From Ministeria vibrans ATCC 50519 (Eukaryota; Protista; Filasterea): 56,560 bases of DNA. Below the pieces are notes generated by a model. It did not search any database, was not told where the DNA came from, and was given only the letters and a program-made list of their open reading frames with translations. This document shows, piece by piece, positions 2,926 through 52,030 of this stretch. The translations under genes were made by a program, and so were the position numbers. The stretch spans positions 1 through 56,560 of the forward strand of contig CALSCP010000372.1 in the NCBI GenBank assembly GCA_943704425.1, given 5' to 3'. The stretch's first letter is position 1. Each line of letters begins with the position of its first letter.

Positions 2926-3111
2926 TCTAAAGCAAAGAAGTTTGTTTTATAATAGTTTATCATTATATCATATTAATAATTATTTATGATTTATCTGTTG
3001 CTTATAATACTCTCTCTCATTTGACATTTCTCATTTCTCAAAGTTTTTGACTTTTTGTAATTTGCTTAGTGTCACTATCGTCGCTTGCGACCGCCTTTGC
3101 TCAATATCAAG

Positions 3112-5220
<2,109 letters not shown>

Positions 5221-5291: not shown

Positions 5292-6533
5292 TTAAGCTTT
5301 GTACATTGGGGGTGATGAGAGCAGTGCGATTGTGTCTGTGTGTTTGTTCTGTGTGGCGAGTCGAAGTGCCTCGCGTCGGTCGTTTGCTGTCAAACTCGGG
5401 TCACTGATAAGCAAACGCACTATTTGAGAGTGACCCAGACGGGCGGCATCGAAGAAGGGCGCGTGGTTGTTGAGTGAGAGGTCTACGCGACCGTCGGCCA
5501 AAAGGAGACGCACGATAGACGGGTGGTTTTGTAGGGAGGCGCGTGAGAGGGCGGTCGTAAGCACACCCGATTGGACAGTGTCGCGTCGGTCGCAGAGTAG
5601 TGCGCGCGCCGTGTCAACGTGACCCTGGTTGCACGCCACCAAAAAGTCGCGCGTGTTTCCGCTGTTGGCATTGACACGCTTGTCGGACAAGAGGAGACGT
5701 ACCACTTCAGCGTGGCCATTTTGTGCGGCCATTCGGATGGGCTCGTCGCCACACGCGACAGGATTCACCCGCACGTCCGAGATGAGAAGCGCCACGGCCT
5801 TGGCGTGGCCATTAATAGCGGCCACGCGTAGCGCTGTGTTGCTGTCCACCGCCGGGTCGCATCGGCTGTCGTGCAGCAGCATGCGAAGAGTGTCAATGTG
5901 TCCACGCTCAGCCGCAAGCACGAGCGGCCAGCTGCCTTTGAGCGCCTGGCCCGACCGCGGATGGGCCAGCAACAGACGGACAATCTCCGTAGCACCCTCG
6001 GCGGCGGCCATCATCATGCTCTTGTGAATGGCTTCGACCGTGCTGGCGAGGGGATAGCGCAAGAGAACGCGAACGACGTCAACTTTTCCAAGCATTCCCG
6101 CGACCGCCAGAAGCGACGGCGTCGCCGTGGTCGGCAACGAGAGTGCCTCTGTGTAGCAAGGATACAGGGGTGCAGCGGTGTCAATGGAAGCGGACTCCAT
6201 GAGCGCCACAACGGACCGAAGTCGGCCCATAATGACTGCATTCTGGAGGATGAGTGTGAGCGAACGCAGCGAAACACAGCCGGCGAACAAGTCCTCGTGC
6301 TGCTCGAGTCTCCTGTCCCACGAGTCTGATGAGAGGAGGAACGCCTCGAGGATCTGGCACATCTTGTAGGAGGCGCCCTTCTCGGGCGTGGCGTTGAGAT
6401 GGTTTCGAAAGGAGTAGACGCCGTGCAATGCGGTTATTACAAACAGATCGGTGCACGTCCAGCGAAGCGCCACCGCGGTCTCCGGGTCGCACCGAGCAAC
6501 GATCATCTCCATCACCTCATAGGGGACGCGCAT
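5292..6533 (-). CDS. F-box-like plus ankyrin-repeat protein, single exon (413 aa)
   Basis: N-terminal VPYEVMEMIVARCDPETAVALRWTC (F-box-like); repeated AAxxGHxxVVRLLLxDxRVDP ankyrin units. Confidence 0.85.
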   Translation of the reverse strand: MRVPYEVMEMIVARCDPETAVALRWTCTDLFVITALHGVYSFRNHLNATPEKGASYKMCQILEAFLLSSDSWDRRLEQHEDLFAGCVSLRSLTLILQNAVIMGRLRSVVALMESASIDTAAPLYPCYTEALSLPTTATPSLLAVAGMLGKVDVVRVLLRYPLASTVEAIHKSMMMAAAEGATEIVRLLLAHPRSGQALKGSWPLVLAAERGHIDTLRMLLHDSRCDPAVDSNTALRVAAINGHAKAVALLISDVRVNPVACGDEPIRMAAQNGHAEVVRLLLSDKRVNANSGNTRDFLVACNQGHVDTARALLCDRRDTVQSGVLTTALSRASLQNHPSIVRLLLADGRVDLSLNNHAPFFDAARLGHSQIVRLLISDPSLTANDRREALRLATQNKHTDTIALLSSPPMYKA

Positions 6534-8100: not shown

Positions 8101-9147
8101 ATGGCGGCCAAATTACGGCTACTGTTCTTTGGAACAGACCGGTTTGCCTCGACGATCTTGACGGACTTGGTGCGACGGTGTCGGGCAGTCGAGAGGGTCA
8201 CGGTCGCATGTCCAACCGATCATCGCGGCGTTCCCTGCGAAGTGGCCCGGTTTGCACGCGCCGAAGGGCTCGAAGAGATTCCTGTGAGCGGACGCAAAGG
8301 ATTGCAGCAGCTGGGGGCGCGCCAGACGTTTCCCTGGGACCTGGTGGTCGCCGCGAGTTTTGGCCATCTGATTCCGGAGCGCATCATTGAGCGCAGTCGC
8401 GAAGGGGCCCTCAACGTCCATCCGTCGCGCTTGCCACGGTGGCGTGGGGCAGCTCCCATTGCTCGTGCAATGCTTGCGGGCGTCGACGAGACCTGGATCA
8501 GCATTTGCGAGTTGTCACCGCGCAGATTTGATCATGGACGGATTCTCCTGGAACGACGAGTTGAGCTGCCCTCGCGCACCATGCACCACGAGGTGACAAG
8601 AAGACTTGCGGTCGAAGGAGGCGACTGCATCGTGACCGTCGTCAACGATTTGCATCGCTACCAGGCGAACAGCTGGGCACAGAGCGACGTGGACGTGGTC
8701 CACGCTCCAAAGCTGACGACGGCCGACGCACAAGTGCTATGGGAGACGGAGACACGCGAATCGGTCGCTCGACGCTTCTGTGCCGTCTCCGACTACTATC
8801 CTCTCTGGACCATGCCTGCGTGGCCAGGCGCCCCAAGTGAGCCTCTGCTCCTCTACGACCTTGACTTGTCCCTGCCCACTCCACTCTTCTTCCGCTCCCA
8901 CAGCAACCCCACCGCCTCTCCGCCACCCCACCGCCCCGGTACCATTGCCGCGTGTCGTACCAGTGAAAGTTCAACTGGCAGCGATGCTCATCACGGCCTT
9001 GCAATCGCCTGTGCCGACGGCTGGACCGTTTGGCGCGCCGCTCGTGTCCGCAGTCGCGCCCGTCTCCCCGCAAAACAATTTGCCATGGGCTACCTCAAAA
9101 TGTCCCATGTTGCCCGTGTATATTCTGTGCCCTCTGTACCATCATGA
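8101..9147 (+). CDS. MTFMT: Methionyl-tRNA formyltransferase (probably mitochondrial), single exon
   Basis: LLFFGTDRFA, DLVVAASFGHLIP, ALNVHPSRLPRWRGAAPI, FDHGRIL, HAPKL motifs of Fmt. Confidence 0.92.
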   Translation: MAAKLRLLFFGTDRFASTILTDLVRRCRAVERVTVACPTDHRGVPCEVARFARAEGLEEIPVSGRKGLQQLGARQTFPWDLVVAASFGHLIPERIIERSREGALNVHPSRLPRWRGAAPIARAMLAGVDETWISICELSPRRFDHGRILLERRVELPSRTMHHEVTRRLAVEGGDCIVTVVNDLHRYQANSWAQSDVDVVHAPKLTTADAQVLWETETRESVARRFCAVSDYYPLWTMPAWPGAPSEPLLLYDLDLSLPTPLFFRSHSNPTASPPPHRPGTIAACRTSESSTGSDAHHGLAIACADGWTVWRAARVRSRARLPAKQFAMGYLKMSHVARVYSVPSVPS

Positions 9148-9428
9148 GAGGCGTAAGCCAGTAAGAGAAATGCACAATGTACTCTGAATGTAATCTCGTT
9201 GAAAGAAACCATAATCAAGTAAAGAAAAGAGAGAACCCCAATTGTATTGGAAATGGAGACAAGAGCTGTAGTGGCTGGCGCTCAGTAGTCTGTCCCTTGA
9301 GTCCCTTCACCCTTGCTGAATACTGATTGTAAAAAAAAAAAAATGGCCGCAGACTCTCTATATCATCTGAGTAATAATTATTGTCTTTGCAATGTTGTGA
9401 TTTCACTTACTTGACAGTTTTTCTATTC

Positions 9429-12400
9429 ATGTCGGAACGACAAACCCCGCCACAACCGCAACATCCGGCGAGAGCGTCTCCCACGCGGCCTACAGCGCCC
9501 TCGGCGTCTCCGACAGCGCCCACCCCCGCCCCGGCGTCGGGCACAGCACCGCGGATATTGTTCCATCGCGGTGGCGTTCCCGTCGTGTTCCGCCAGTCGC
9601 CCTCTAGCGCCCCGCCCGGTCCCCACAGCGCCGCCTGTCCCCTCCACGTCCACCACGGCCACCCTCCCCACGGCCATTCGCACGCCCACCACCCCCACAG
9701 GCCCGCACAGCCACACATGCCGCCCACATCGCGACCGCAGCCACCGCGCTCCGCCTCCGCCTCCTCCCTGCCCCCACCCGCTCCAAAACAACGCAGCGCC
9801 ACAAGTATGATCCCCTCCTCTCCTTCCCACTCTACCCCGCTCCTTTCCTCTGGCCACCCGCTTAAGAGCATCTCACCGATTTTCCTTTTTTTTTTCTCTT
9901 CTCTCTCTCTCTTGACCTTCTTAGTCCTCAAAATGAGCCCTATTCTGCTTGTGGACCACGGCAACGACGGTGCTACCATCAGTTGGGAACACCCCGATCC
10001 CCAAAACAACGGCCAGTGGGAGTTTAGCGTTGAGGTGCGATCGCATTTTGCCACCGAACGAAAACTGCCGGAGTTTGTGGCACTCACCAGCGACGCCTGC
10101 ACCATGTCCTTTGGTCCTATGAAAGAGACGGAGACCTCGACAGTGATATCACCATCATCACCAGCATCGCCATCGTCGTTGTCTTCATCGACGGTTGCCA
10201 GCAGCGCTCCCAATGGCACCACAGTCAGAAAGGAACGGTTGCTGTGCACCGCCAAATTGTGCTTCCACATTCGACCCGGCCGTGAGCATCACATTCGCGT
10301 TCGCGCTCTTCTTGCAAAGTCGTCCAACAAAAGTACTGGTGATGCTGTCGGACAAGCAAGCAATGGTATCATTGACACGCGTACATTTTAATTCTGTGTC
10401 GGACTCGGATTGATTTTATGTGTGTGTCTGCGTTATTTTTTTTTTTCATTTCTTTTTTGCAGTTGTCATGTTCACAAGCAAACCCGCTGCTCCCGATGCA
10501 CCTCTCTCAATGGAACTGACGAGTCGAACCAAGAACACACTCACGCTCAAGTGGCCGCCCGTCGATCACAACGGCGACGCACTCAGCGCATACGAATTGT
10601 GGGGTTGCGACGTGAGCGACTGCGACAACAAAAACGACGCTGTTGTTGCTGATGAGGACCGCTACCCACTTGACAAATTTGTGTTGATCTGGACGGGTCT
10701 TGCGACGTCACAAAAGGTCAAAGAGATTGGCCTGAGCAGTGGTGGTGGAGAGGGGAAGGAGGGTGAGGAAGGCGGCGTTCGGTTGCGACCGTGTGGCACT
10801 TATGCGTTCCGATTGCGTGCCTCAAACTCGCTTGGTTGGGGCCCATTTGGTGTTGTAAGTGCGTTTACGACGTTTGCTGCGGCTCCCGATGCGCCTCTTG
10901 CGCCGCGCATTACCGCATGTGATGCGCACAGTATTGTCTTTGAATGGGACCCTGCGTGGGACAATGGGGCGCGCATCACTCTCTACGAGGTGCAAATGAA
11001 ACGCCATCATATCGACGAGCTCAGCGGAAGCGACAAGAAGGCGAAGAAAAAGTCGTCGGGGTCGGCGTCGTTGTCGTCGGTGTCTTTGTCGGGCGCGCAC
11101 ATGAGCTATGAGTCATGGGAGATTGTCTATGTGGGGTCGGATCTGCATGGACGCGTGGACCGTCTGCCGCGTTGCACGTCGTACCAGCTGCGCGTGCGCG
11201 CAACCAATCAGCGTGGTGTGGGACCGTGGTGTCAACCGGTTTCTTTGGCAAGCACGACGCGCGAGGCGCCGGGCGAGCCCCGTCGCTTGGGTCTAGTGGG
11301 GGACGCGCGTGTGGGTGAGATTGATGTGGGCTGGGAGGCGCCTCGCGATTTGGGTGGCTTTGAAGAGGAAGAGGACAGCAAGGGGAGCGGAGACCAGGGC
11401 GGGCACAAGCCCACGCTGTGGTATGTGTTGCAGTCGGACGATGCAGCGGGCGGTGAGTTTGTCAATGTGTACACAGGCTCCAACACGCAGTGTGCCGTCG
11501 AGCGGCTCACGCCTGGCCGTACCTACCGCTTTCGCGTTGCGTGTGCGCTGTCGCCCACGGCTCAGCTGGGTAAATGGTCTGCAATTGCCGAGTGTGCATC
11601 GCTTGCGACTGCTCCGCTGGCACCCTCGGGTGTCGCACTGGTCGAAATCTCAGCGTCCTCCATGAAGATCGTCTGGGATGCGCCCGTCTTGGACCCACTG
11701 GCGCCCGTGACGAGCTACCATGTTGTGTTTATGGATCGAGTGAGTGAAGAGACGCTCTTCGAGGACACGATTCCCGCCAGCAAGGCACTGGTGTCCTTTG
11801 AAGTGAACGAGCTGTGTGCCGCACACACGTACGGCGCCATGATGGCCGCGTGCAACAGCACCGGCGAGGGGCCCATGTCGCCGCTAGTGGAGGCGCGTAC
11901 GAGCCCCGCGGCACCCGAGGAGCCTCACGAGCTGGCACTGGTGTCGGCGGCGACTGCCTCGTCCGCTGTGCTTACCTGGAGTGTTCCGTACGACAATGGC
12001 TCGCCTGTGTCCGACTACCGCTGTGTTGTGACTCCCCACGAGAAATCGTTTACCGTCGAAATGGTGCACGAGCCTGTGCCCCAAGTGACCCTCTCGGGTC
12101 TTGCACCGGCCACCGAGTACAGTGTGTGTGTGCACGCAATCAACAACTATGGCACATCGGTGGCCTCCGAGCCACTAGTGTTTCGCAGCGACGTGTCTGC
12201 GCCCGGAGCCATTGATCACCTTCGGGTTGTGTCGCGCGACGAGACCTCGCTCGAGTTTGAGTGGAGTGCACCCGCTCACGACGGTGGCAGCCCCGTACGT
12301 CGCTATCTACTGCACGTGTCGCCTGCTCCTGCTGACGGTGCCACCGAACTGGCTGTTTTCGAGGCGCGGGCGCAACTGGACGGACTCATTGCGGCAACGT

Positions 12401-13533
12401 CCTACACGGTGCGTGTCGAGGCGGAGAACGAGCGAGGACTCGGGCCTCGCTCGGGACGTGTGGTGGCACGCACACTGGCACCACGACCCGCGCGCGCACA
12501 GGTTGAGGTACAACGCGTCACGCACAGTTCAGCGCGCCTGTCGTGGTCTATGGAAGCGAATGGCACTGGTGGTGGCGAGGCACTGAGCTACGAGGTGTTT
12601 GTGGCAAAGAGCGGCGAGCGACGACCACGCAGTGTCTATGACGGAGTGGAGCGACAGTGTACGGTGGGTGAGCTGCAGCCGCGCACTGTGTATGGGCTCT
12701 GTATTGTTGCGATTGGTGAGCGTGGGCGTGGTGAGCCGTCTGTTGCTGAGTTTGTGACGGCGCCTGTACCACTGCCGGCTGTGGCACAGGCGCCGACCTA
12801 TGTGCGCAAGGCGCGAGTGGTGCGGTGGCGACTCAGTAAGAAGGACGCGAGTGTACATATGCAGTACTGTGTGACGCGCCAGCGACGACACGGCTGGACG
12901 CATGTGGTGCGAGATGTGACCACGGACGAGCCACTGACGCGCATGGATGTACATCGTGTGTGGGAAGTGGAGAGGGAACGTGAGGGTACGGCTGTGGTGC
13001 AAGAGTTGAGTGGGGAGGTGAGTGAGTGTGCGCTGGATGGCACAGACGAGGAGGTGGAAGGCACACGCTGGCGGGTGCGTGTGATTGAGGTGGCCACAAC
13101 ACGCAAGTGGATGGTGGTGGGAAGAGAAGATGGAACCGGTCGAGGGGAGAAGAAGGCTGAAGAGGAAGGGGAGGAGGAGGAAGAGCCGGAGGAGGAGGAA
13201 GCGGAGAGTTGCGAGAAGGGAGAATGGATTGTGGAGGGCCGAGCAGAGCGACGGGAAGGACCTTGGAGTGATGCGTGTGTGGTGACTGCGGCGGTGGCTG
13301 AACCAGCTGAAAAGGCTGTCGCTGCCGTCAAGATGGAGCGGCTCCCTGAGACGCATGAAGAGGTTGCGCCCGCTCCCGTCATGACGCCAGTCCCTGCTTC
13401 CCAAAGACCATTGAAACAGAGCGCGTCTCCTGTCGACAGCGAAAAAGAAGCCGATGGAAATGGACTTGTGGTGGCACTCGTTGCGCTCGCGGTGTTTGTC
13501 GCTCTTGTCGCAGCGTTTGTACAACTTTTATGA
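9429..13533 (+). CDS. FNDC3-like protein: Pro/His-rich N-terminus, tandem fibronectin type III domains, C-terminal transmembrane anchor
   Basis: Repeated FN3 units (W.PP..NG..I..Y.....L.P...Y.FR.RA.N..G.GP), no signal peptide, hydrophobic C-terminus LVVALVALAVFVALVAAFVQLL; architecture matches animal FNDC3A/B. Confidence 0.8.
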
Positions 13534-32203: not shown

Positions 32204-33846
32204 ATGCCGTTTGGCATCCCCTTTTCGACGTACCGGCCCCTTTTGGTCGCCATAGTTCTGTTCCTGTCACTGACAGTGATTTGGAACGGGAGCAATGAGA
32301 ATGAGAGAGCGTTTCAATCAGTGTCAGTCTCACACAATCGTCTCACCGAAACCAAGCGCGTGGACGCACATGGCAGCATGCCTACTCATGATAGCCGTCA
32401 GAGCCAAGTGGGCTATGTGGCGTACGGACCCTCAGGTGGCTGGAACAACCAAAGAATCACGTTTGAGTTTGCGCTGTGCGTTGCACATCTTCTCAATCGC
32501 ACTCTTCTTGTCCCTCCCGCCTCTCCACACCCGCCCTCTTTGGTGGACCAGTCGTCCTTGCGTACTTCCAACTTTTCCGGGTACGACCTTGTGCCAGCAA
32601 GCGAACTGATGAGCGTGTGGGACTTTTTGGATCGAGAACAAATTGAAAAGGTGCGAAAAACGAGAGAAAGTGAGTTTTATTTATTGGTGACTGATCGTAA
32701 ACGGTAGATGAACCCGATTGTCGATATGGGGCTGGAGTGCCATCCGCCGGGTCAAGGACAGGCTGAGTGTCTCCGCAAGCAATACGGGTCGGTCTTTCGT
32801 GTCTGTCATGAACGCAGAAAAGGTTTTTGGACCGATCGCTCAACGCCAGGTTACAATTAATTTTTATGTCTTTTTCTTTCTTTCTTTCTTATTATTATCA
32901 GTAATAATTAATGTTGTACATTATTCTCGTCCTGCGTTGCTTTGTAGTGTTGAGTTCATTGTGAAATTTCCCTTACTCTTCTTTGCGAGTAGGTTCCGTT
33001 CTTCTTCAAAACTTTGCCTATCGAACATACCTCAAGGACAAGCCGCACTGCACCACTCCCGAAGACGAAGCATTCTACAAAGGAAAGACTTTTCCCCTAC
33101 TGCGTAGTGTCATTGACGAACTTGGTCCTGTCACGGAGCAAGTCATCCTAATCGACGTAAGAAACCATAAGAGAATCATATCACGTCATAACAAATCACC
33201 TGTTTAGGACCATAGTGCGTTCGCGGATCTTCGGTTCCACCTTCCACACACGTATCACACGTACCAACGTTTGTTGACCACGCACAGTGTTCATGCGCCT
33301 TTTCTTCTCCAATGTGCGGAAATTCTTCTGAAGGAGTTTGGGCTATTGAATGCGCGCGACACACACGCTGTGCCCTTCAATGCGATCCATTTGCGGATGT
33401 ACACCCGTGCAAAGGTCAAAATGCGAACCGCGTTTGAGCCTGAAACGAGACTCAAGGATGTCTCACTGCCACTGTTTGTTGCAACCAATGTGAATGTGCG
33501 GAAAAACTTAAAAAATCGTCAAGGAGTACTTGACTTGCTGGAAGAGGTGCTGGGACCTGGCGCAAACCTGGATCGAGTGCACTTCTCTACTGAAAGTAAG
33601 CAAGTGGAAAAAATGATTGAGGAGCGGTACAGAGAAAGTCAACGAGGCGACATTTGGGGCGCAGTGGATCAAGTGGTGTCGGTCTTAGCAGATGATTTTA
33701 TGGGATCGCCCCAGAGCACTTTCGCCATGTTCATCTATCGCCAGAGAGGCATTTGGGGTCAAGTGGGCTCACGACGCACGTCTACCATTGAGTGGCTGGG
33801 TGCGAGGCGGAACCCGCCCTTGGATGAGCGGGATTTTATGAAGTGA
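32204..33846 (+). CDS. O-fucosyltransferase-family glycosyltransferase, tandem copy 2; spliced
   Basis: Same motifs as copy 1 and the same C-terminus (IEWLGARRNPPLDERDF). Confidence 0.82.
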
Positions 33847-33938
33847 AAGAAAGAGAAAGAAATGTTGAATGAAAATTGATGTGAAAATATTTATCAATGT
33901 ATTTATGATAAGACTCTTCATTATTCTTTCACACTTTT

Positions 33939-36900
33939 TTACGGCTCACGATAGACAGCACAGCGAGCAGCATTGGAAAGGGAAGAGCCAGAGCCTTGAT
34001 TTGTGCTTGTGATGGACATGTAGTACGTGAAGTCATTTTTTGTGTGATAATCCTAAAAACAAAGACGAACAGTGAGAGTTAGGCTCTCGCTCTTTCTTTC
34101 GTGTATAGTCTCTCTCTTTTCTTTGGGGTGGGCTTACGCAAGAAGAAGTACTACCGCATTCAATTGCAACCTGTTTGCGGAACACAGGCATACACGAGCC
34201 AACCGACGAAAGATCTTGAGTGTAGTGGCCGCCACCACCACCGCCAAATCCAAGGAAAGAGTACCCTACGAGAACAAGTCAACTCACGCGCCTCACACAC
34301 ACTCTCTCTCAGTCTCGCGGTACCACTCCAGAGACTGACCCAGCCTGAGATAGGGGCAGAAGGAATGGAACTGGACATGGAGTGCGCAACCATGACGGCC
34401 TTGGTGGACGTGACAACACGGCAGCGCGACACAGCCGCTGCCGGATTGGTAAGTGTACCCGTGTCCACTGAGAGAGCAGTGAGCCAGTACGCATAGTCAG
34501 AGCCCGTAAAGTAATCGCAACGTGTCGGACTGTCACATTCGGTAAAGGGAATGGCGCGGAAGGTCTTTAGGCACGAGTTGGGACCACCCAGGTCCACCTG
34601 GAACGTAATTCCATCGCCACCAAGACCGTACATAAACGAGTAACCTGTCCAGAGCGAAGTGTATCCGGACGGAGTCGGTGGGATTTGGTTGCTCTGCGAG
34701 TGTCGTGCAAATGTCGCTCCACTGCTCGTCCCGGCTTGCCCTTTACTCCCGGTCGCGCCAGTCGCTCCTTTTTGACCTAATACATTATACATAATGAGAT
34801 TGAGTATAAAATAAATCAAGACAACACACACAAGATGGTAAGTATGCCATTACCCGTTGCTCCTTTGGGTCCAGTGATAGACTGTCCGTTTGCACCAGCG
34901 GCACCCTATAGAAATAAGCGTGAAGAAAGAGAGAGAGTGTGTGTATGTGTGTCAGTGAGTGGATGTGCGTGTGTATGTGTGTGTTGATTGAAGGACTAGC
35001 TGCATTACAACTCAGAAGAAGGGTTAATTTCGGTTTGAATGACGAGTGCGGCAAAAAAAACTGGAGAAAACTCAATTGTTTCCCCTCACACTCCCACACA
35101 TATGTATACCTTAGCGCCTTTTGCCCCGGTAGGTCCAACAACGGATGCGCCAGTAGCGCCTGATGAGAAGAGATCATAAGGAGAGAGGAAAATGGATATG
35201 GCAACAAGCAAGGCAAAAATGAAGAGTAAAATATCAAGAAAAGAGAGAGAAACAAAGACGTGATAGAGAGAGAGAAAAAAAAAAAAAGAGGGGAGACAGA
35301 TGCACAACAATAGGGAATGAAGAATGACTTCACCCGCATACCTTTGGTGCCTTGAACGCCCTGCACTCCCTTGTCACCCTAAATAGAGAAAAAACGAAAT
35401 ATATGATTGAGAGGGAGATTAAGGAGGATAAACAGTTAACAATTGTAAACATGGAAAGTTGGTGACAAGTGAGACCACACTCAAATAAAAGATACCTTCT
35501 GACCAGTGGGCCCAGTTGGCCCAACAATGGAAGCACCAGGAGCACCTAATGAATGGAGAGAGAGAATGAATGAGTTTACTGGCAGATGAATCAAGTATGA
35601 GAGGAAAGGGGGAAAAAAAGTAATGAAAAAGAGAGAGGACTACATTCAAGAAGGAGAAAAAAGGATTTCATGAAGACGATAATAATAAAACACAACAGAA
35701 ACTCATAATCATATAAATTGTTATGTTGATGGTTGGTTGAGTCTCACCTGCTACGCCTTGAATGCCTTGAGTGCCCTGAGCGCCACGATCACCCTATAAG
35801 AACGATAATAATTGTAGGCATGATTAAAAAAAGCATCGTTCGATTTGAGGGCGACGGAAATAACAAACTAGGGTAGGAGATAAAAGTGTCGCATACCTTC
35901 GGTCCGGTTGGTCCGGTAGGGCCAACAATGGAAGCACCGGGAGCACCTGAGTATGATACAAAGAGAGAGAGAGAGGTAATGAGGGGAAAAATGGGGTGGA
36001 ACACACAAAGTGAAACAAAACATAATTCAGAAATGAAAGACAAGTGGAAGACGTCAACCAGTGAGCCCGTTGAGCAACAATCACATGAAAAAAAAGTGAA
36101 TTCTGATGGCAATTGACAATGACAATAACAACTCACACACATACACAGACAAGACGGAGACAGAGAGAGACTGACAGATACACAGAAAGAGACACGATAA
36201 AGCAACATTTCCATTACCTTTAGGGCCTTGTGGGCCAGTAATGGACACGCCCTGGACACCTTGTATTCCCTGACTGCCACGCTCGCCCTAGTAGTACGAT
36301 AGTCCAGTGAGACAAAATAGAATAAGAAAAGAACAAGGCGAAACGACAATACTAATAGAAATTAATTATTATTCACTTTTTCTGCATCACAAACGAGGGG
36401 GGGGGTTGTAATTATGGGGTCGTTAAAATGATAATGGGCTCGAAAATTGTCATTCAAGGAATAAAATGAAAATACAACACAGGCTCACACAGCGCAAATC
36501 GATACTTTTTGTACATACCTTGGGGCCAGTGGGTCCGACAGGGCCCACAATCGAGGCACCAGTAGCGCCTGATGAAAGAAAAGAGGGGAGGATGAGAGAA
36601 AGAAAGAAGGGAAAAGACAGACAGAAAAGAAGATTGCAAATGAGCTGAAGAGAGCCAACAAATATAATGTGTGAGTGTTGTACCTGCGACACCTTGAGCT
36701 CCTTGCAAGCCCTGGTCACCGCGATCACCCTAGGACAAAACAAAAACCGTATTAGACTAATTCTACTTCATTCGTATTGTCAGCAATAGAATTGATAACA
36801 GATTGGATAGTCAACGTTTCTGCGTTTTTTTAAGGTAGAACTCAAAGGGTATCAGCCGATATGCACAATCGCTAATAAAATGTGCGTTACACCTTCCAAA

Positions 36901-39767
36901 AAATTAGATGTCTCGCAAAAATTAAACGCGCAAACACCACCCACAATAAAACAAAATCAACCTATACCTTTTCGCCACGCAATCCAGCGCTTCCAGTACT
37001 CCCTTTCGGGCCTACAATATAAAATCAACAACAAATAAAACACATTCACTCGTACATTCATTCACTCATTCAACCACTCAAACACTCACCCACCCCCATA
37101 TCAAGTCTTACCTGTTGCGCCAGTATCGCCCTTGATAGACTCACCGGGATCTCCCTTATCGCCGCGTGGTCCCGCAACGCCCTGTGATCCCGACAGATCC
37201 TCAAGATAGGTCCATCCCACAGAGTTTCCTTCCCAGACATAGAGTTGTGCACCCGGATTTGACACAAGTGCAAACTCGCCAATCTGCACCGGAAGACCTT
37301 CGTCTGAGACGGGATTGGTTGAGACCATGTCAGCGATAGACGCATACACAATGACAATGGCAAATCCTTGTCCTGTGTCGCCTTTCTACGCCACGTCAAA
37401 AACAAACGGAACCCATCGCAGAGAGTACAGCAATTGGGTGAGTGTGCGTTGTGTTTATTTCATATTTTTCTTACGCTGCCTTTGACTGAATCTCCTTTGT
37501 CTCCCTTGAGCTGTCCAGAGTTAAGACTGCACCACGTAATTGATTAGTAGTAAGCACGACATCGCCTCTCTTACCTTGAAACAAGGGTTGCAACGGAATC
37601 TTTAACGGAGACAATGGCTGCGGCATTAGCGGATACATTGGCTTTGACCTGTTCGACTGTGGATTCATCGACGAGGTTGAGCTGAAGAAGCGCCAGGAGA
37701 CGCACGAGAGTCGCCTCGTCGACGACTGTCGAGCCAATCTGGAGGTTGTTGGTTGCACGAAGGGTCGCACTTGCAACTGTGTTTGTGGCGGTGATGGAGG
37801 AGGCACTCAACGTGTTCGCGGTGAGTGCACCAAGAACAGTCACGGCGTCCGCGTTGATGGTGCTTGTATCGATAGCAGTGCTATAAACGGTGCCGCCTGC
37901 GTGTACGTCTTTGGCAACGTGCGACTCGTGCGACGAGATGTTGTGTACTGTCAGTAGGTTGGTGATGGACGCAGAGGCAGCAGTGAGGTCTGCGGAGAGC
38001 GACAGAGACGCAGCCGAGAGGGACGATGCCACTGTCATGGTCTGCGTTGAGATGGAGGTCGCTGTGAAGGCGTTGGTGGTGAACGCAGTGGACAAGTCAA
38101 CGTTGTTGACGCTCAGTGAGGTGGCACTAAGCGACGCGATGGAGGCTGAGGCGGCCGTAAGCGAGCCTGAGAGGGTCACCGAGGCAGCGGACACACTTGC
38201 GGTGGTGACAGACTGGCTTGTGGTAAGACTCGTCGCTTGCATGGCGCCCGTAATGTCAAGCGAACCACCGGCAATGGCATTGGACACAGTCAGCGTGACA
38301 GCAGTGAGCGTGTCGGACACGGTCGCATTGGTGGCACTCACAGTGCCTAGAGTTGACGAATGAGCGACGCTGAGTGAATCACCCGAGAGCGCACCCGATG
38401 CAGTGATACTTGAAGCGGCGAGTGCGCCCGACACACTCGCCGACTGACCACTAAGTGTATTCGCCGAGAGCACGCCCGTAAAACTGGCCGAGACACCCGA
38501 CACAGAGTTGGTGACGGTAAGACTCTGGGCGTTGATGGCGCTGGTAAACGAGGCAGTGGTGCCGGAGATGGACGCCGCTGAGAGAGACTGGGAAACACTG
38601 AGTGAGTCGGCCGAAATGGCACCCGATGCATTCACAGTGGAGGCAGTGAGTGAGCCCGACACACTCGCTGACTGAACACTAAGTGTGTTAGCAGAGAGAG
38701 CACCCGTGAAACTGGCCGAGGCGCCTGACACGGCGTTGACAACAGCAAGGCTCTGGGCACCGATAGCGCCGGTAAACGAAGCGGTGACGCCTGAGACAGA
38801 CGAAGCCGAGACAGACTGATTAACGGTGAGCGAGTCGGCGGAGAGCGCACCCGACACGCTCGCCGACGCGGTGGTGAGGGACGTTGCGGAGACGGTCGTG
38901 CCCGAGACAGACGAGGCAGAGACAGACTGAGTGACGGTGAGCGAGTCGGCGGAGAGCGCACCCGACACACTCGCCGATGCGGTGGTGAGAGACGTTGCGG
39001 AGACAGTCGTGCCCGAGATAGACGAGGCCGAGACAGACTGAGTGACGGTGAGCGAGTCAGCGGAGAGCGCACCCGACACGCTTGCTGAGACAGTGTCGAG
39101 GGACGTTGCGGAGACAGTTGTGCCCGAAATAGCACCGGTGATGTTCAGGGAGTCGGCCGAGGCGGCACCTGTGAGCGACATGGACTGGCCGGTGAACGAG
39201 GCGGCGCCTACGTTGTTCATGAAGGTCGCCGAAGCGCCTGTCACGTCTGCGGTCGACGCAATACTGGCCGCTGCAACGGCACCCGTGAACGATCCCGTCT
39301 CGCCTGTGAGCACAGTCACACCCAGCGAGGTGATTGTTGCCTCATTGGCGACGGCGAGGATGTTGGTTGCGACGTAGGGAGCCGCGAAGGAGTTTGCCGT
39401 GAGCGACTCCTTCAGGATCAGGTGGTCCGCTGTGATGTTCGTCGCGGCAAACGCAACCCGGTCGATTTCAACACGAACCCCATCGGCGCCCGCGCCAATG
39501 TGTACGACGTCGTCACCCTCTTTGCGGAAGTACGCCGCATTCCTGTGCAAACGTACGACAGACCCAGAAAAAAAAAAAAAAAAAAAAGTTGNNNNNNNNN
39601 NCGTATGGTTAGACTGTTAGTCAATCATCTCCGACATTGTCTCGATTCCGAAAAAATGTTGTGGTCACACTAAAAAGATAAGAAGAAATGAAAGGAACTG
39701 ACTCAAGTTGAGCATGGCAGGTGCTCAGCACGACCATGAGGGTCGCAATACCAGCAATGAAGTTCAT
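33939..39767 (-). CDS. Secreted collagen IV-like chimeric fibre protein: signal peptide, Ser/Ala/Thr repeat shaft, coiled coil, interrupted Gly-X-Y helix, C-terminal NC1 (two C4 repeats); about 16 exons
   Basis: Exon 1 MNFIAGIATLMVVLSTCHAQLE joins in phase to a 2 kb exon (39543-37575); phase-compatible GT-AG microexons give about 70 Gly-X-Y triplets; NC1 reads FARHSQ...LWTGYSFM...DLGGPNSCL..F...PF.EC....C.Y....YAYWL...SRC and AHSM...LWSGYSFL...QDLSSVGSCM..F....IEC....C.Y...ARCAVY. Confidence 0.92.
38400..39130 (-). repeat. Coding tandem repeats in the collagen N-terminal shaft: 111 bp (37 aa) units and 228 bp (76 aa) higher-order units
   Basis: gcgagtc(g/a)gcggagagcgcacccgacac recurs at 38830, 38941 and 39052; cccgacacactcgc at 38427 and 38655. 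Confidence 0.9.
39592..39601. other. Assembly gap (10 N) inside collagen intron 1
   Basis: N run next to a poly-A tract. Confidence 1.
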
Positions 39768-42453: not shown

Positions 42454-43841
42454 ATGCTCCCTCCTCAGGCGTCGGCGTCGGTCCATGGATCGTATGCTAG
42501 GGAAACGGTCAGTCAGAGGCTACCGGCAATCTTGACGCGTGCCATTGATCGGTGTAGCCGTGCGCTGTCGTCAACGGCAACGGACAGCGATCAGTTGCGC
42601 GCGGCCGTCTCCAGTCTGGTCCAGCTCAAATACCAGCTGACGCACGACAAGGCATTGGGGGCGCTCGAGGGGACGTTGGTTGGGGACGAAGGTGAGTGGA
42701 ATGAGGCGCTCGTGGCCGCCGGGAGGCCGTCGTGGTTCTCGGCGTCGTGGCTGCTCGCCGAGTGCTACATGTATCGCCGCATTCGCGCCGCCAACATCCC
42801 TTTTGACGTGTTTGCCGAGGGCAAGCAGCACAGCTTCCATGAGTGTCTTCCAGCAATGGAAACGCTGGCGCACACCCTCAAGGTGGCGTGCCAGAGCGTC
42901 GAAGATCGCACGCACTTGCGACGCTTCCTTGAGTGCTCCCTGTGGGGCAACCGCGCCGACCTGTCTCACTCGGCGACCGCCCCCTCTGCGGACGACGACC
43001 AAGCGGCTACTGTCGACACCATTGACGATGCGCGTCTTCGGGAACTCGCTGCCACACGCCTTCTCATTGACGACGTGCCAGCCATCGAGGCGCTCCTGAC
43101 TGCACTACCAAGTCCATCTCGCATTGACATTGTCCTTGACAACGCCGGCTACGAGCTCTTCTCCGACCTGTGCCTCGCCGAATGGCTCCTTACAGCCAAC
43201 GTGGGCTCCCATATTGTGCTCCATGTCAAAGACTACCCCTGGTTCGTCAGCGACGTCACCCCATCCGACCTCACATGGACTCTCGATCAGCTCAGTGCAT
43301 CGCACTCTGACGCCCTCAGTGCACTCGCCCAGCGCTGGTCTAACCGTCTCTATCACGATGACCCTCCCACCCTTCAAATCCATCAAGATCCCTTCTGGAC
43401 ACAACCTCACTCCTTTTGTGACATGCCTTCGCGTGCTCCGCAACTCTACTCCTTTCTACAGGACGCCGCTCTGGTCATTTTCAAGGGCGATTTGAACTAT
43501 AGGAAACTCGTGGCGGATCGAATGGTTTGTCAGAAACTGCTGCAGTATGTGTGGTTGTAATGTGTGTAAATATGTGTAGTGGGAGTACGATACGGATGTT
43601 TCGGTGGCACTGGAAGGGTTTCTACCGACATCGGTGTGCTCCCTACGGACATTGAAGGCGGAATGTGTTGTCGGTATTGGAGGAAGAAAGTACTGTTGAG
43701 TGTGATTTATGCATTATCTTTTATGTAGGGGTAGAATTGGACAAGGTGAAGCGAGTAAGGGAACTGGATGGTGATGCTTGGCTGAACAATGGGAAGAATG
43801 GAGTCATCTCGTTGGTGGCGAAAGGAAATGTAGCAAAATAA
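42454..43841 (+). CDS. ARMT1: Damage-control phosphatase ARMT1 / DUF89; 3 exons
   Basis: RLPAILTRAID, WLLAECYMYRR, SLWGNRADL, DIVLDNAGYELFSDL, PWFVSDVT, IFKGDLNYRKLV, LRTLKAE. Confidence 0.94.
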
Positions 43842-50568: not shown

Positions 50569-52030
50569 ATGTCTTCCAGTATGCTTAATGGCGAAAAGGA
50601 GGAATTTGAAACCCGTCAGTCGAGAATCACGTTTTCAGCGGTGGTAAAATGGATTGCCCTTCTTGTGCTGGCTCCCGTCGGCATCCAGCCAGTGTACATA
50701 TCAACTGCGGGCCAAAGGGGCTCCATCAAAGTGCTTCTCCCTCTGGGACCACTTGGATGGACGCTCTTTTTTCCGTGCGACTGGGAAAAATATGCGCTGA
50801 GGTCGAATGAGGTTGACACGCGCTGCTGGACAATCGTGTTCTTGTTCATGATGCCCGTCTGGATCCAATATCACGCACACCATGACGTTTGCGAAGCGGT
50901 TCATCGCCAGTCTGCGTTGCTGCAGATGCTGTGTACAATTGGCGCCGTTTGCAACGCCTATTTCGTTCTACTCCTCGCCTTCTGCGGCGTCCAGCCTCTC
51001 TATACCGCGTGCCTTGGGTCGCACACGACTATTAAAGTGTACTTTCCCATGGGTCCTATTGGTTGGACGTTGGTTTTTCCTGCTGACTGGAAGAAGCTTT
51101 CGCAACGCTCAGACGCAGAAGAAGAGCACACGCCAATCATTACTGTGTTTGTTGTTCTTCCTGTGTGGGTTCAATGTGCCACACTCCAAGACGACACGCA
51201 ATTTCTTCTCACGGAAAGCCCCGGTGTCCCTTGCAACTATTACGGAAGCATGGCAAAACCCCAGTCTGAAAAGTCCATCGCTCAGCCGTCGCTTGTTGTT
51301 GACGAAGGGTTCGTCGCAGGGACCACGCTCTCAGAGCTGTCCGACATCGGGTGGACTGTAAAGCATCCCGTTAACCCTCAACTACGTGAACCGCCAGTTG
51401 TGGTTTGTATTGCAGGCGGAACCAATGCAAGCGCGGAATTTGACAACTTGTTGCCTTTGCGAGCCGCCGACGATTCACCGTCCTCCCAAGCTCCTCTGAT
51501 TGAATGGGGTTCGATCAAGCAAGAAAACACAAGCACACCTCTTCTTGGCGTCGTAAAATGCGTAGCTCAAGCGCCTCCTCTTGAATCTGGTAAGAGGAGG
51601 AGCAAGGATAATTAATTAAAAAAAACACTAGTTTAGCCGACCCCCTCTCTCCTCGATGTAGTTCTCGTTGACGTCGCCAACCTGACGCCTCTGAACGACG
51701 AGCTCAAAGCGCGCACTGCGTCTGCATCTTTTGCATGGCATTTGGTGTGTAAAGCAGTGGATGCAATGATTCTAGTTGTGAGTCATTTGTCACTTGATGA
51801 ATTGTGTCTGCTCGAGAGCGCTGCGGAATCATTGGGAGCCCACCGCGTGTTTATTATTCATTTGGCTCAACACAAAAACGCAGAGCCTGTCACCGAGTCT
51901 GCCGCCTCTTCCATTGCTCTACAAACTTTGCAGGTGTGTTCTTTTATGTGTGTGTGTGTGTGTGTGTGTGTGTGATTATTATTGTTGTAAAGAATTATTT
52001 CGAGGAATCATTCAGGANNNNNNNNNNTTT

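What the first reader, a model, noticed from the sequence alone, without database searches (positions are those of the whole stretch)
33939..39767. Collagen IV NC1 capping a phage-fibre-like chimeric protein in an apparently unicellular eukaryote
Seen: one in-phase spliced gene encodes a signal peptide, ~600 aa of Ser/Ala/Thr/Val short repeats, a short coiled coil, about 70 Gly-X-Y triplets and a two-repeat C4/NC1 domain. Established: NC1 defines basement-membrane collagen IV. Animal chains have a Cys/Lys-rich 7S N-terminus and roughly 1400 residues of helix, not a beta-repeat shaft. A collagen IV-like gene has been reported in the filasterean Ministeria. Inference: this is a trimeric secreted fibre (shaft + collagen + NC1), possibly for a stalk, adhesion or prey capture, and a model for what NC1 did before basement membranes.
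Basis: partly seen in the sequence, partly recalled or inferred. Interest (0 to 1): 0.92.

Follow-up and report, generated by a model that had tools for sequence, protein, structure and literature searches.

The report
Protist collagen–NC1 fibre with prokaryotic kin
The gene is real and is very probably the already published "collagen IV-like" gene of the amoeba Ministeria, but its collagen rod and NC1 cap look more like those of bacteria, archaea and phages than of animals, which weakens its use as a pre-animal collagen IV.

Summary
A 17-exon, all GT-AG, in-phase minus-strand gene (39767-33939, 1182 codons) encodes these parts in order:
- a signal peptide;
- 655 aa of Ser/Ala/Thr/Val repeats;
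- a heptad-like stretch;
- about 70 Gly-X-Y triplets;
- a two-repeat C4/NC1 domain (Pfam 1.8e-27).

The assembly gap lies in intron 1, so only the signal-peptide join depends on it.

The architecture matches MvCN of Ministeria vibrans (2017, 2021, 2026 papers), with a constant offset of about 30 residues. The gene itself is therefore most likely already known.

Three results here go beyond the papers I could search.
- C4/NC1 is common in prokaryotes. It caps pilin-like, tail-fibre-like and collagen-like proteins in a Bdellovibrionales MAG, in a contig with an archaeal-type TFS gene and in other contigs. One bacterial-context ORF has signal peptide, collagen and NC1, and is the window NC1's closest relative (49% identity, same four-Cys pattern).
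- The window's collagen is prokaryote-like: Pro is 4% of Y positions, against mostly 34-45% in animal chains.
- The collagen also carries a phage tail-fibre module (43% identity to a Lactobacillus phage fibre).

ML trees place every NC1 piece among prokaryotes, but AU tests do not reject an animal sister position (p 0.27-0.33).

The Ser/Ala/Thr/Val shaft has no detectable relative.

The parts
39703..39767 (-). Exon 1: ATG plus a signal-peptide-like 21 codons and 2 nt (MNFIAGIATLMVVLSTCHAQL, then GA)
   Evidence: Donor is GAG|gtcagt. Signal-peptide character is judged by inspection only.
39543..39702 (-). Intron 1. It contains the assembly gap 39592-39601, followed by a long poly-T tract and the acceptor cacag|G
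   Evidence: This is the only join in the model that crosses unread letters.
37575..39542 (-). Exon 2: about 100 aa of non-repetitive head, about 450 aa of Ser/Ala/Thr/Val repeats predicted as beta-strands, then a C-terminal non-repetitive part
   Evidence: 63% S/A/T/V, 0 Cys, 1 Pro; 111-nt unit x3.1 at 38789-39127 and 228-nt unit x2.1 at 38370-38854. AF2 strands over residues 73-503, pLDDT 44. No relative found.
37577..37717 (-). Last ~47 codons of exon 2, with heptad-like hydrophobic spacing (a possible trimeric coiled-coil neck)
   Evidence: Inspection of the translation. AF2 gave a helix at residues 629-637 only, at low confidence. Inferred, not shown.
37475..37526 (-). Exon 3 (52 nt): LNSGQLKGDKGDSVKGS, the start of a short collagen stretch. 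It is preceded by a 48-nt intron
   Evidence: This is the only acceptor that keeps both the exon 2 frame and the Gly-X-Y frame.
37112..37385 (-). Exon 4: the end of the short collagen stretch, a non-collagen module, then the start of the main collagen rod
   Evidence: PHROG tail-fibre families 3904, 4440 and 819 at E 4e-9 to 4e-7 over residues 1-90.
37191..37367 (-). Phage tail-fibre-type module of 59 residues (GFAIVIVYASIADMV...IGEFALV...LYVWEGNSVGWTYLEDLS)
   Evidence: 16 Lactobacillus phage records, best 42.6% identity over 89 aa, E 1e-10; 43% identity to Sabazios tail fibre AYH91854.1, including the non-collagen part. IMG/VR locus L010 shares KGDTGQGF, IGEFA, LY.W.G and DLSG.
34854..37011 (-). 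Exons 5-14: the collagen rod. Eight of these exons form four tandem copies of a two-exon unit (46/70/37-nt exon plus 50-nt exon), and most of the 2-residue interruptions (G-x-S-[IV]-[VKT]-G) lie here
   Evidence: exons and phases. (repeat families D1 and D2, four copies each). (Pro 21% at X and 4% at Y). (interruption motif).
34324..34776 (-). Exon 15: the last 6 triplets, the whole of NC1 repeat 1 (34400-34720, with the HSQ motif and 4 Cys) and the first ~25 residues of repeat 2
   Evidence: C4, E 1.8e-27. (solved NC1 chains). (478 representatives at E<=1e-3).
34138..34265 (-). Exon 16: the core of NC1 repeat 2 (42 codons, 3 Cys)
   Evidence: C4, E 1.2e-6, profile positions 26-66. (alignment to the repeat profile).
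33939..34052 (-). Exon 17: the end of NC1 repeat 2 (..ARCAVYREP) and the stop TAA at 33941-33939
   Evidence: Tyr stands where animals have the sixth Cys, as in the prokaryotic proteins L001 ORF, P0012 and P0026.

Best explanation
This is the filasterean collagen-plus-NC1 gene, the MvCN type; it is probably Ministeria vibrans itself or a very close relative.

How it most likely works. It encodes a secreted 1182-residue chain that most likely forms a homotrimeric fibre, not a basement-membrane network. After signal-peptide cleavage, the C-terminal NC1 domain trimerises. It sets the register of the three chains, and the collagen rod then zips up from the C-terminus towards the N-terminus. This is the established folding direction for collagens and the established role of NC1 in collagen IV protomers. 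The rod has about 70 triplets, which by my arithmetic is roughly 60 nm. Eight 2-residue interruptions would act as hinges. The rod runs through a phage tail-fibre-type module and a short coiled-coil-like neck into a Ser/Ala/Thr/Val beta-repeat shaft and an N-terminal head. There is almost no Pro at Y positions, so the helix would be stabilised as bacterial collagens are (Thr, Gln, Lys and charge pairs) rather than by hydroxyproline. Without a 7S domain, without the Cys1-Cys6 disulfide, and with no Met or Lys in the loops that carry the sulfilimine cross-link in animals, it should not build a covalently cross-linked collagen IV lattice.

Origin. The rod, the module and the NC1 cap are all of the prokaryote/phage kind. 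The most economical reading is that a prokaryotic or phage collagen-NC1 fibre gene was transferred into this lineage and then domesticated: it gained 16 introns, underwent an in-situ fourfold duplication of a two-exon unit, and acquired a eukaryotic signal peptide.

Likely use. Substrate, prey or cell-cell adhesion.

Shown: the gene structure, the domains, the prokaryotic relatives, the collagen composition and the module homology.
Inferred: trimer formation, the direction of transfer and the adhesive role.
For: Gene model.

NC1.

Prokaryotic C4/NC1 family:
- In a search of 1.84 billion cluster representatives, the best non-self hits (P0002-P0021 and P0023, 40-49% identity) have no collagen run. 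They rank above every collagen-bearing chain and every protein with a source name; the first such hit is rank 22, and the first full-length-size collagen IV chain is rank 94.
- Several have a prepilin N-terminus. Pfam finds N_methyl plus C4 in P0016.
- Gene contexts are prokaryotic: LpxB/LpxK; an AraC-type regulator; a record titled 'MAG: Bdellovibrionales bacterium CG12...'; a TFS-type zinc-ribbon gene, hence archaeal, next to two tandem C4 genes.
- N-terminal parts of P0012, P0016, P0006 and P0004 hit tail-fibre PHROGs.

Closest relative: L001:2644-4896 is an uninterrupted 750-aa ORF with a signal peptide, Pfam Collagen (1e-55) and C4 x2 (1.4e-47) in a bacterial context. Its NC1 is 49% identical to the window's and has the same four-Cys pattern. 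Its AF2 model (pLDDT 94.8) matches only collagen IV NC1 structures, at TM 0.89-0.92 for the complete NC1 chains.

Trees:
- In the concatenated two-repeat tree, animals form one clade (100/96). The window's repeat 1 is sister to L001 and P0026 inside the prokaryotic side (89/75).
- With the four exon pieces entered as separate rows, all four fall on the prokaryotic side of a 98/98 split, and three of them sit with four-Cys prokaryotic proteins.

Collagen:
- Pro at Y is 4% in the window and 2% in L001. It is 12-45% in 13 animal-type chains, and 34-45% in most.
- The G-x-S-[IV]-[VKT]-G interruption occurs 8 times in the window. It occurs 9 times in 274 viral triplets and 2 times in 3294 animal triplets.

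Module.

Domestication. A 98.98% identical environmental scaffold carries the same introns.

Literature:
- MvCN's domain coordinates match with a constant offset of about 30 residues, and its N-terminus was reported to resemble bacterial proteins.
Against: - AU tests do not reject the window's NC1 as sister to animals. In the single-repeat test the constrained tree even had the higher likelihood (p 0.56). In the concatenated tests p was 0.33 and 0.27.
- In the repeat-by-repeat tree the window's repeat 1 sits in a polytomy.
- The four-Cys state arose several times on the tree, so it is a weak shared character.
- The HSQ motif and the C4-C4 order are shared with animals as well as prokaryotes.
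- The viral loci used for the interruption motif were retrieved with a pattern from the window (DKGDPGES), which biases that count.
- No prokaryotic or viral protein with the window's full architecture was found, and no NC1 was found in viral contigs.
- The shaft has no relative at all, so its origin is unknown.
- Trimer formation, secretion and adhesion were not tested here.
- The organism is inferred from the literature match, not from a sequence identity.
Confidence: 0.55

Rival explanations
1. Vertical relic. [quoted passage not shown] 2017. It was later remodelled by shortening of the helix, loss of one disulfide per repeat and fusion to a new N-terminal shaft. On this view the prokaryotic C4 proteins are either an older outgroup or recipients of transfer.
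For: - AU tests cannot reject window plus animals as a clade, and in the single-repeat test the constrained tree scored higher.
- The HSQ motif and the C4-C4 order are as in animals.
- The host is a close relative of animals according to the literature match.
- The 16 introns and the in-situ exon duplication show a long residence in a eukaryote.
- The gene is co-expressed with integrin-adhesome genes during aggregation.
Against: - Both concatenated two-repeat ML trees, and the FastTree of single repeats, put the window's pieces among prokaryotes; the IQ-TREE of single repeats leaves repeat 1 in a polytomy on the side away from animal repeat 1.
- The closest NC1 belongs to a bacterial-context collagen-NC1 protein.
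- Collagen composition and interruptions are prokaryote/phage-like.
- A phage tail-fibre module sits inside the rod.
- NC1 was reported absent from all 28 other non-animal holozoans examined, including 22 choanoflagellates. Vertical descent would therefore need many losses.
Confidence: 0.3
2. Two genes. The 2-kb repeat exon, with or without exon 1, is a separate gene ending at the TAA that overlaps the exon 2 donor. The collagen/NC1 exons belong to another transcript.
For: - The in-frame stop TAA (37573-37571) follows the proposed donor AG|GTAAGA at once, so an unspliced reading ends there.
- The next intron is unusually short, at 48 nt.
- No transcript data could be examined here.
Against: - Downstream of exon 2 there is no ATG-initiated signal peptide from which a secreted collagen could start.
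- The 48-nt intron has GT-AG ends, a TACTAAT-like branch site, and restores the Gly-X-Y frame exactly.
- The published MvCN has the N-terminal domain (residues 1-731), the collagen and the NC1 in one protein, with matching coordinates.
Confidence: 0.06
3. Artefact. This would be a bacterial or phage contaminant, or a chimeric mis-assembly, joined to eukaryotic sequence.
For: - The gene's parts resemble prokaryotic and phage proteins.
- There is an assembly gap near the 5' end.
Against: - Sixteen canonical, phase-consistent spliceosomal introns interrupt the coding sequence.
- Flanking ORFs match Pfam families typical of eukaryotic proteins (ankyrin, FN3, O-FucT, ARMT1-like), and base composition is in the range of the rest of the window.
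- An independent metagenome scaffold is 98.98% identical over 2453 bp, covering exons 12-17, their introns and the neighbouring gene.
Confidence: 0.02

Closest known systems
MvCN, the 'alpha type IV collagen' of Ministeria vibrans (Grau-Bove 2017, PMC5560861; bioRxiv 10.1101/2021.10.08.463732; PMC13366479)
   Same: [quoted passage not shown]
- The published boundaries are N-terminal domain 1-731 and NC1 from 938. Here they are 1-760 and 971, a constant offset of about 30 residues.
- It is the only NC1 protein reported from a non-animal eukaryote.
   Different: - Identity could not be tested by sequence.
- The triplet counts differ, 81 published against 70 here, but the counting rules differ too.
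- The roughly 30 extra residues may be the signal-peptide exon or a difference between gene models.
- The published accounts do not mention prokaryotic NC1, the tail-fibre module or the Y-position Pro deficit.
Animal collagen IV alpha chains (COL4A1-6, Drosophila Viking/Cg25C, and the cnidarian, sponge and ctenophore chains)
   Same: - A C-terminal two-repeat C4/NC1 domain.
- The HSQ motif.
- An interrupted Gly-X-Y helix.
- A signal peptide.
   Different: - No 7S domain.
- 70 triplets rather than hundreds.
- 4 rather than 6 Cys per repeat.
- Pro is 4% of Y positions rather than about 35-45%.
- No Met or Lys in the loops that carry the sulfilimine bond in animals.
- No head-to-head partner gene in the window.
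- 655 aa of Ser/Ala/Thr/Val repeats at the N-terminus.
Prokaryotic C4/NC1 proteins (unnamed family). Examples: L001:2644-4896 (collagen plus NC1, bacterial context), P0154/L009 (Bdellovibrionales MAG, pilin-like plus NC1), L008 (contig with an archaeal-type TFS gene, TM plus NC1), P0012 (tail-fibre-like plus NC1)
   Same: - The NC1 sits at the extreme C-terminus of a fibre-like or anchored stalk.
- These are the best sequence matches to the window's NC1 (40-49% identity).
- A subgroup has the same four-Cys pattern, with Val or Tyr in place of Cys6.
- L001 also has a signal peptide, a non-collagen N-terminus and a collagen poor in Y-position Pro.
   Different: - They have no introns.
- None has the Ser/Ala/Thr/Val shaft or the tail-fibre module.
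- Most have no collagen at all.
- Their function is unknown.
Collagen-like tail fibres of phages (PHROGs 3904, 4440 and 819; Lactobacillus phages Sabazios, Silenus, LL-K) and bacterial collagen-like proteins such as Scl2 and BclA (the latter two from my own knowledge)
   Same: - The 59-residue module is flanked by Gly-X-Y on both sides, at 43% identity.
- The G-E-S-I-K-G and G-x-S-I-V-G-P-T-G interruptions are shared.
- Pro is at X and Thr, Gln or Lys at Y.
- The general plan is a trimeric rod with a globular C-terminal cap.
   Different: - None of the phage proteins retrieved has an NC1 cap.
- Their N-terminal parts are unrelated to exon 2.
Spongin short-chain collagens of invertebrates
   Same: A short collagen region followed by an NC1-related C-terminal domain.
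   Different: By the criterion quoted, spongins lack the HSQ motif, which this protein has. They also have no long N-terminal shaft.

Membership tests
Collagen IV (animal basement-membrane type) | C-terminal NC1 made of two tandem C4 repeats (PF01413) | tested here: met
   exon 15 at E 1.8e-27 and exon 16 at 1.2e-6; solved NC1 chains at about 1e-33. Exon 17 completes repeat 2 in the profile alignment.
Collagen IV (animal basement-membrane type) | Twelve conserved Cys (six per repeat, three disulfides each) | tested here: not met
   There are four Cys per repeat, and the first and sixth are missing in both repeats. That Cys1 and Cys6 pair with each other in the solved structures is from my own knowledge.
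Collagen IV (animal basement-membrane type) | Long interrupted triple helix (more than 100 triplets by the criterion quoted; roughly 1400 residues in vertebrates) | tested here: not met
   70 triplets by hand count, 67 by script.
Collagen IV (animal basement-membrane type) | N-terminal 7S domain rich in Cys and Lys, for tetramer formation | tested here: not met
   The N-terminal 655 aa have 0 Cys and 5 Lys and are 63% S/A/T/V.
Collagen IV (animal basement-membrane type) | Pro frequent at Y positions (hydroxyproline sites) | tested here: not met
   Pro is 4% of Y positions, against 12-45% (mostly 34-45%) in 13 animal-type NC1 collagens.
Collagen IV (animal basement-membrane type) | Sulfilimine cross-link residues (Met93 and Lys211 in human alpha1 numbering) | tested here: not met
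   The corresponding loops (..YWLTALSVDTGTLTNPAAAVSRC.. and ..STNQGSGSSLSNAARC..) contain neither Met nor Lys. The residue numbering is from my own knowledge. I recall that the cross-link is absent from some early-branching animals too, so this row is weak.
Collagen IV (animal basement-membrane type) | Orthology: the NC1 groups with animal NC1 in a phylogeny | tested here: inconclusive
   The FastTree and both concatenated IQ-TREE trees place the window's pieces among prokaryotic sequences, and the single-repeat IQ-TREE leaves repeat 1 unresolved. AU tests do not reject the animal-sister position: p 0.56, 0.33 and 0.27.
Collagen IV (animal basement-membrane type) | NC1 hexamer formation and network assembly | not testable with these tools
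   This needs multimer modelling or biochemistry.
MvCN of Ministeria vibrans | Same domain order and boundaries as published | tested here: met
   The published boundaries are 1-731 for the N-terminal domain and 938-1122 for NC1. The boundaries here are 1-760 and 971-1182, derived from exon arithmetic. The offset is about 30 residues.
MvCN of Ministeria vibrans | Sequence identity to the published protein, or the organism's identity | not testable with these tools
   No reference sequence was available by id, and sources of the window's own proteins are masked.
Prokaryotic C4/NC1 fibre-cap proteins (unnamed) | The two-repeat C4 domain at the extreme C-terminus, most similar to prokaryotic members | tested here: met
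   The best non-self hits are prokaryote-type proteins at 40-49% identity. Prokaryotic contexts were seen. The NC1 fold of a prokaryotic member was confirmed.
Prokaryotic C4/NC1 fibre-cap proteins (unnamed) | Encoded in a prokaryotic genome | tested here: not met
   The window gene has 16 spliceosomal introns and eukaryotic neighbours. It can only be a transferred or related member.
Phage collagen-like tail fibres | The conserved non-collagen module flanked by Gly-X-Y (PHROGs 3904, 4440 and 819) | tested here: met
Phage collagen-like tail fibres | The beta-repeat 'shaft' (exon 2) related to phage fibre proteins | tested here: not met
   There was no PHROG, phage tblastn or IMG/VR match. The AF2 model was too poor for a fold search.
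Spongin short-chain collagen | NC1-like domain without the HSQ motif | tested here: not met
   HSQ is present in repeat 1 (..ARHSQSN..), and repeat 2 has HSM.

The most novel reading that the evidence does not exclude
C4/NC1 is natively a prokaryotic domain that caps the C-terminus of extracellular fibres (pilin-like, tail-fibre-like and collagen-like). On this reading, the one 'collagen IV' known outside animals is a transferred prokaryotic or phage collagen-NC1 fibre. The signature domain of animal collagen IV, and possibly the whole collagen-plus-NC1 cassette, would then have entered the holozoan stem from prokaryotes rather than being invented there.
Probability: 0.3. Interest if true: 0.9.

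Novelty: already known. Interest (0 to 1): 0.6.

Why it matters
Collagen IV is treated as a founding invention of animal tissues. The Ministeria gene is cited, as recently as 2026, as the only case outside Metazoa and as evidence for a pre-animal origin.

The follow-up changes its context. The NC1 fold is widespread in bacteria and in at least one contig with an archaeal-type gene. A protein in a bacterial gene context has the full collagen-plus-NC1 layout. The protist's rod is built like a phage fibre.

If confirmed, the protist gene stops being a clean witness for an ancestral collagen IV, and the origin of NC1 becomes a question about transfer from prokaryotes.

It would also give experimenters simple prokaryotic NC1 proteins. 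With these they could ask what the domain does on its own: trimerise, dimerise head-to-head, or bind.

Tried and rejected
Exon 2 (the shaft) gave nothing in any search:
- two word-index searches, one with the whole exon and one with residues 1-130;
- Pfam, PHROGs, NCBIfam and PDB sequences;
- tblastn against phages;
- IMG/VR;
- a comparison with the L001 N-terminus, which gave only compositional noise.

The AF2 model of exon 2 had pLDDT 44. I did not send it to a fold search, because matches to a poor model are meaningless.

Genome and metagenome scans:
- A3 found nothing in genome contigs or in viral contigs, and one locus in metagenomes (L008).
- A4 recovered only the Bdellovibrionales MAG.

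Full report
**1. The observation**

The feature is on the minus strand. Reading 39767 to 33939, I rebuilt a 17-exon model in which every intron is GT-AG and every phase agrees. It totals 3549 nt, or 1182 codons plus TAA. The extra one is a 52-nt exon (37526-37475) behind a 48-nt intron. That acceptor is the only one that keeps both the exon 2 frame and the Gly-X-Y frame.

- Exon 1 (39767-39703) reads MNFIAGIATLMVVLSTCHAQL and looks like a signal peptide. This is by inspection only.
- Exon 2 (39542-37575) gives 655 codons that are 63% Ser/Ala/Thr/Val, with no Cys and one Pro. DNA repeats of 111 nt (x3.1, 90% matches) and 228 nt (x2.1) correspond to 37-aa and 76-aa periods.
- Exons 3-15 carry about 70 Gly-X-Y triplets with eight 2-residue interruptions.
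- Exons 15-17 carry the NC1. Pfam C4 hits exon 15 at E 1.8e-27 and exon 16 at 1.2e-6. Single solved collagen IV NC1 chains match exon 15 at about 1e-33 to 1e-30.

The 'short coiled coil' is only a heptad-like spacing at the end of exon 2.

**2. The assembly gap**

The gap at 39592-39601 lies inside intron 1 (39702-39543). No reading frame crosses it. Exon 1 ends in phase 2 (GA) and exon 2 starts with G, so the splice is compatible. One in three random joins would also be compatible, and the gap could hide sequence. Only the attachment of the 22-residue signal-peptide exon depends on it. Exons 2-17 are free of gaps. Exon 2 has no start codon of its own before about residue 108, so some upstream exon is needed.

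**3. What the literature already holds**

- Grau-Bove et al. 2017 reported a 'canonical type IV collagen' in Ministeria vibrans, with collagen repeats and C4-C4.
- A 2021 preprint named it MvCN. It gave these boundaries: N-terminal non-collagenous domain 1-731, NC1 938-1122, and 81 triplets. It noted the HSQ motif. It found three bacterial BLAST hits to the N-terminal domain, called the protein a possible eukaryotic-bacterial fusion, and found NC1 in none of the 28 other non-animal holozoans examined.

In my model the N-terminal non-collagenous part is 1-760 and the NC1 starts at 971, a constant offset of about 30 residues. I therefore take the window gene to be MvCN or its orthologue in a very close relative. 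I could not test sequence identity.

An ENA metagenome scaffold (L007) is 98.98% identical to window 32932-35384, introns included. The same organism, or a sister strain, therefore occurs in an environmental sample.

The window is not human and not animal-like.

**4. NC1 is not confined to animals and Ministeria**

I searched exon 15 against 1.84 billion cluster representatives. It found 478 proteins at E<=1e-3.

- After a 99% identical self-fragment (P0001), the best hits are short proteins without collagen, at 40-49% identity. The first chain of canonical collagen IV length is rank 94.
- Many start with a prepilin-type motif. P0016 has Pfam N_methyl plus C4 x2.
- Gene contexts are prokaryotic. 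I saw LpxB/LpxK next to P0007 and DHH, ABC transporter and GMP synthase genes next to P0003 in an NCBI MAG.
- P0154 carries the title 'MAG: Bdellovibrionales bacterium CG12_big_fil_rev...' and lies next to a family-5 solute-binding protein gene.
- In L008, two tandem TM-plus-C4 genes lie next to a TFS-type zinc-ribbon gene, which marks an archaeon.
- The N-terminal parts of P0012, P0016, P0006 and P0004 hit tail-fibre PHROGs.
- Of 117 proteins with two near-complete repeats among the best hits, 61 have no collagen run. About 50 of those look prokaryotic.

I found no paper that reports prokaryotic C4/NC1. Domain databases may already list such proteins; I cannot tell.

**5. A collagen-plus-NC1 protein in a bacterial gene context**

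The closest relative of the window's NC1 is P0002, at 49% identity. It turned out to be a truncated gene call.

- On its contig (L001, high GC, beside an AraC-type regulator gene) the uninterrupted ORF 2644-4896 encodes 750 aa. It has a signal peptide, about 170 aa of non-collagen sequence, about 120 triplets and a two-repeat NC1.
- Pfam gives Collagen at 1e-55 and C4 at 1.4e-47.
- It lacks the first and sixth Cys in both repeats, as the window protein does. It has Val and Tyr where the window protein has Val and Tyr (RC.VV...KAV and RC.VY).
- An AF2 model of its NC1 (pLDDT 94.8) matches only collagen IV NC1 structures, at TM 0.89-0.92 and about 2 A rmsd for the complete NC1 chains. The alignment behind that model included animal sequences.

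**6. Trees**

I used the window's NC1 exon by exon and never joined.

- A FastTree of 201 single repeats puts the window's repeat 1 with L001 and P0026.
- An IQ-TREE of 95 repeats leaves it in a polytomy, on the side of a 95/83 branch away from animal repeat 1.
- With repeats 1 and 2 concatenated for the other proteins, animals form one clade (100/96). The window's repeat 1 is sister to L001+P0026 (89/75), several nodes inside the prokaryotic side.
- With the four window pieces as separate rows, all four fall on the prokaryotic side of a 98/98 split. Repeat 1 sits with L001/P0026 (89/90), and exons 16 and 17 sit with P0012 (93/88).

The AU tests do not reject window plus animals as one clade. 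The values were p 0.56 with the constrained tree scoring higher, p 0.33 and p 0.27. The placement among prokaryotes is therefore favoured, not established. The four-Cys state arises several times on the tree and is a weak character.

**7. The collagen rod**

- Pro occupies 21% of X positions and 4% of Y positions in the window. Y is mostly Lys, Thr or Gln.
- L001 has Pro at 40% of X and 2% of Y.
- Thirteen animal-type NC1 collagens have 12-45% Pro at Y, most of them 34-45%.
- The interruptions have the form G-x-S-[IV]-[VKT]-G, for example GESIKG and GASIVGPTGPTG. This form occurs 8 times in the window, 9 times in 274 triplets of viral collagen-like ORFs (GESIKG, GESIVGPTGPPG) and twice in 3294 triplets of animal-type chains. 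The viral loci were retrieved with a window-derived pattern, so that count is biased.
- Four tandem copies of a two-exon unit show that the rod grew after the introns were in place, that is, inside the eukaryote.

**8. The module**

Between a short stretch of 5 triplets and the main rod lies a 59-residue non-collagen module (37367-37191).

- It hits tail-fibre PHROGs 3904, 4440 and 819 at E 4e-9 to 4e-7.
- It hits 16 Lactobacillus phage records, the best at 42.6% identity over 89 aa with E 1e-10.
- It aligns through its non-collagen part with the Sabazios tail fibre at 43% identity.
- It aligns with an IMG/VR contig that shares KGDTGQGF, IGEFA, LY.W.G and DLSG.

The bacterial BLAST hits reported for MvCN residues 1-731 may owe something to this module. 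That is a guess.

**9. The shaft**

Exon 2 has no detectable relative in any library or collection I could reach. AF2 predicts beta-strands over residues 73-503, but at pLDDT 44. 'Beta-repeat shaft' is a reasonable description. 'Phage-fibre-like' is not shown for this part.

**10. How it most likely works**

The protein is most likely a secreted homotrimeric fibre.

- NC1 trimerises at the C-terminus and sets the register.
- The rod folds from the C-terminus towards the N-terminus.
- The interruptions give hinges.
- The module, the neck and the shaft extend the fibre to an N-terminal head.

Without a 7S domain, without the Cys1-Cys6 disulfide, without the cross-link residues and without Y-position Pro, it should not form a collagen IV lattice. 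In the prokaryotic relatives the N-terminus is the anchor (a pilin helix or a TM segment) and the NC1 is the free tip. By analogy, the NC1 may be an exposed knob that associates or binds. The upregulation reported in aggregating Ministeria fits an adhesive role. Trimerisation, secretion and adhesion are all inferred.

**11. Verdict**

The gene is most likely already known.

The prokaryote/phage-type fibre reading has confidence 0.55. Vertical descent from a pre-animal collagen IV has 0.30. Two separate genes has 0.06, and an artefact 0.02.

Noticed in passing
P0003-P0021, P0154; loci L003, L004, L009: There is a large family of prokaryotic proteins with two tandem C4/NC1 repeats at the C-terminus and no collagen. 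Many have prepilin-type N-termini. One lies in a record titled as a Bdellovibrionales MAG. I found no paper that describes them.
   Followed up: yes
L001:2644-4896 (+): An uninterrupted 750-aa ORF lies on a high-GC metagenome contig beside an AraC-type regulator gene. It has a signal peptide, about 120 Gly-X-Y triplets and a four-Cys NC1. The public gene call (P0002) covers only its last 212 residues.
   Followed up: yes
L008:11-817 and L008:1097-1939 (+): Two tandem genes each encode a TM segment plus C4 x2. They lie on a contig of small, closely spaced genes beside a TFS-type (TFIIS/RPB9 zinc-ribbon) gene, which points to an archaeon.
   Followed up: partly
L007 (ENA scaffold SCHR19-1_SAMN09406036_METAG-scaffold_4375), matching window 32932-35384: An environmental metagenome scaffold is 98.98% identical to the 3' part of the gene, its introns and the neighbouring gene. 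The organism or a sister strain is therefore present in that sample.
   Followed up: partly
window 37571-37576: The stop codon TAA of the long exon 2 ORF overlaps the proposed donor (AG|GTAAGA). An unspliced transcript would therefore end the protein one codon later.
   Followed up: partly
window 35342-36729: Exons 6-13 are four tandem copies of a two-exon unit. Only the exons and the bases next to the splice sites are still alike; the intron interiors have diverged.
   Followed up: partly
window 33271-33846 (+): An ORF with a weak match to GDP-fucose protein O-fucosyltransferase (E 2.5e-4, below the Pfam cut-off) ends 93 bp from the stop codon of the collagen-NC1 gene, in convergent orientation. 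It sits beside a Ser/Thr-rich secreted protein, which may be coincidence.
   Followed up: no
window 9381-13533 (+): A long ORF of 1037 aa carries at least five fibronectin type III domains (E 2e-66). A further weak FN3 match lies in the ORF just upstream. This is probably one large extracellular protein gene.
   Followed up: no
window 52018-52027: A second assembly gap of ten N lies outside the finding.
   Followed up: no
window 5292-6533 (-), 8101-9147 (+), 42454-43560 (+): Neighbouring ORFs match ankyrin repeats, a formyl transferase and an ARMT1-like damage-control phosphatase. An exact look-up of the last one found no public record.
   Followed up: partly
L011, L012, L013, L016 (IMG/VR contigs): Viral collagen-like ORFs carry the same 2-residue interruptions as the window's rod (GESIKG, GESIVGPTGPPG). 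These loci were found with a window-derived pattern, so the frequency is biased.
   Followed up: partly
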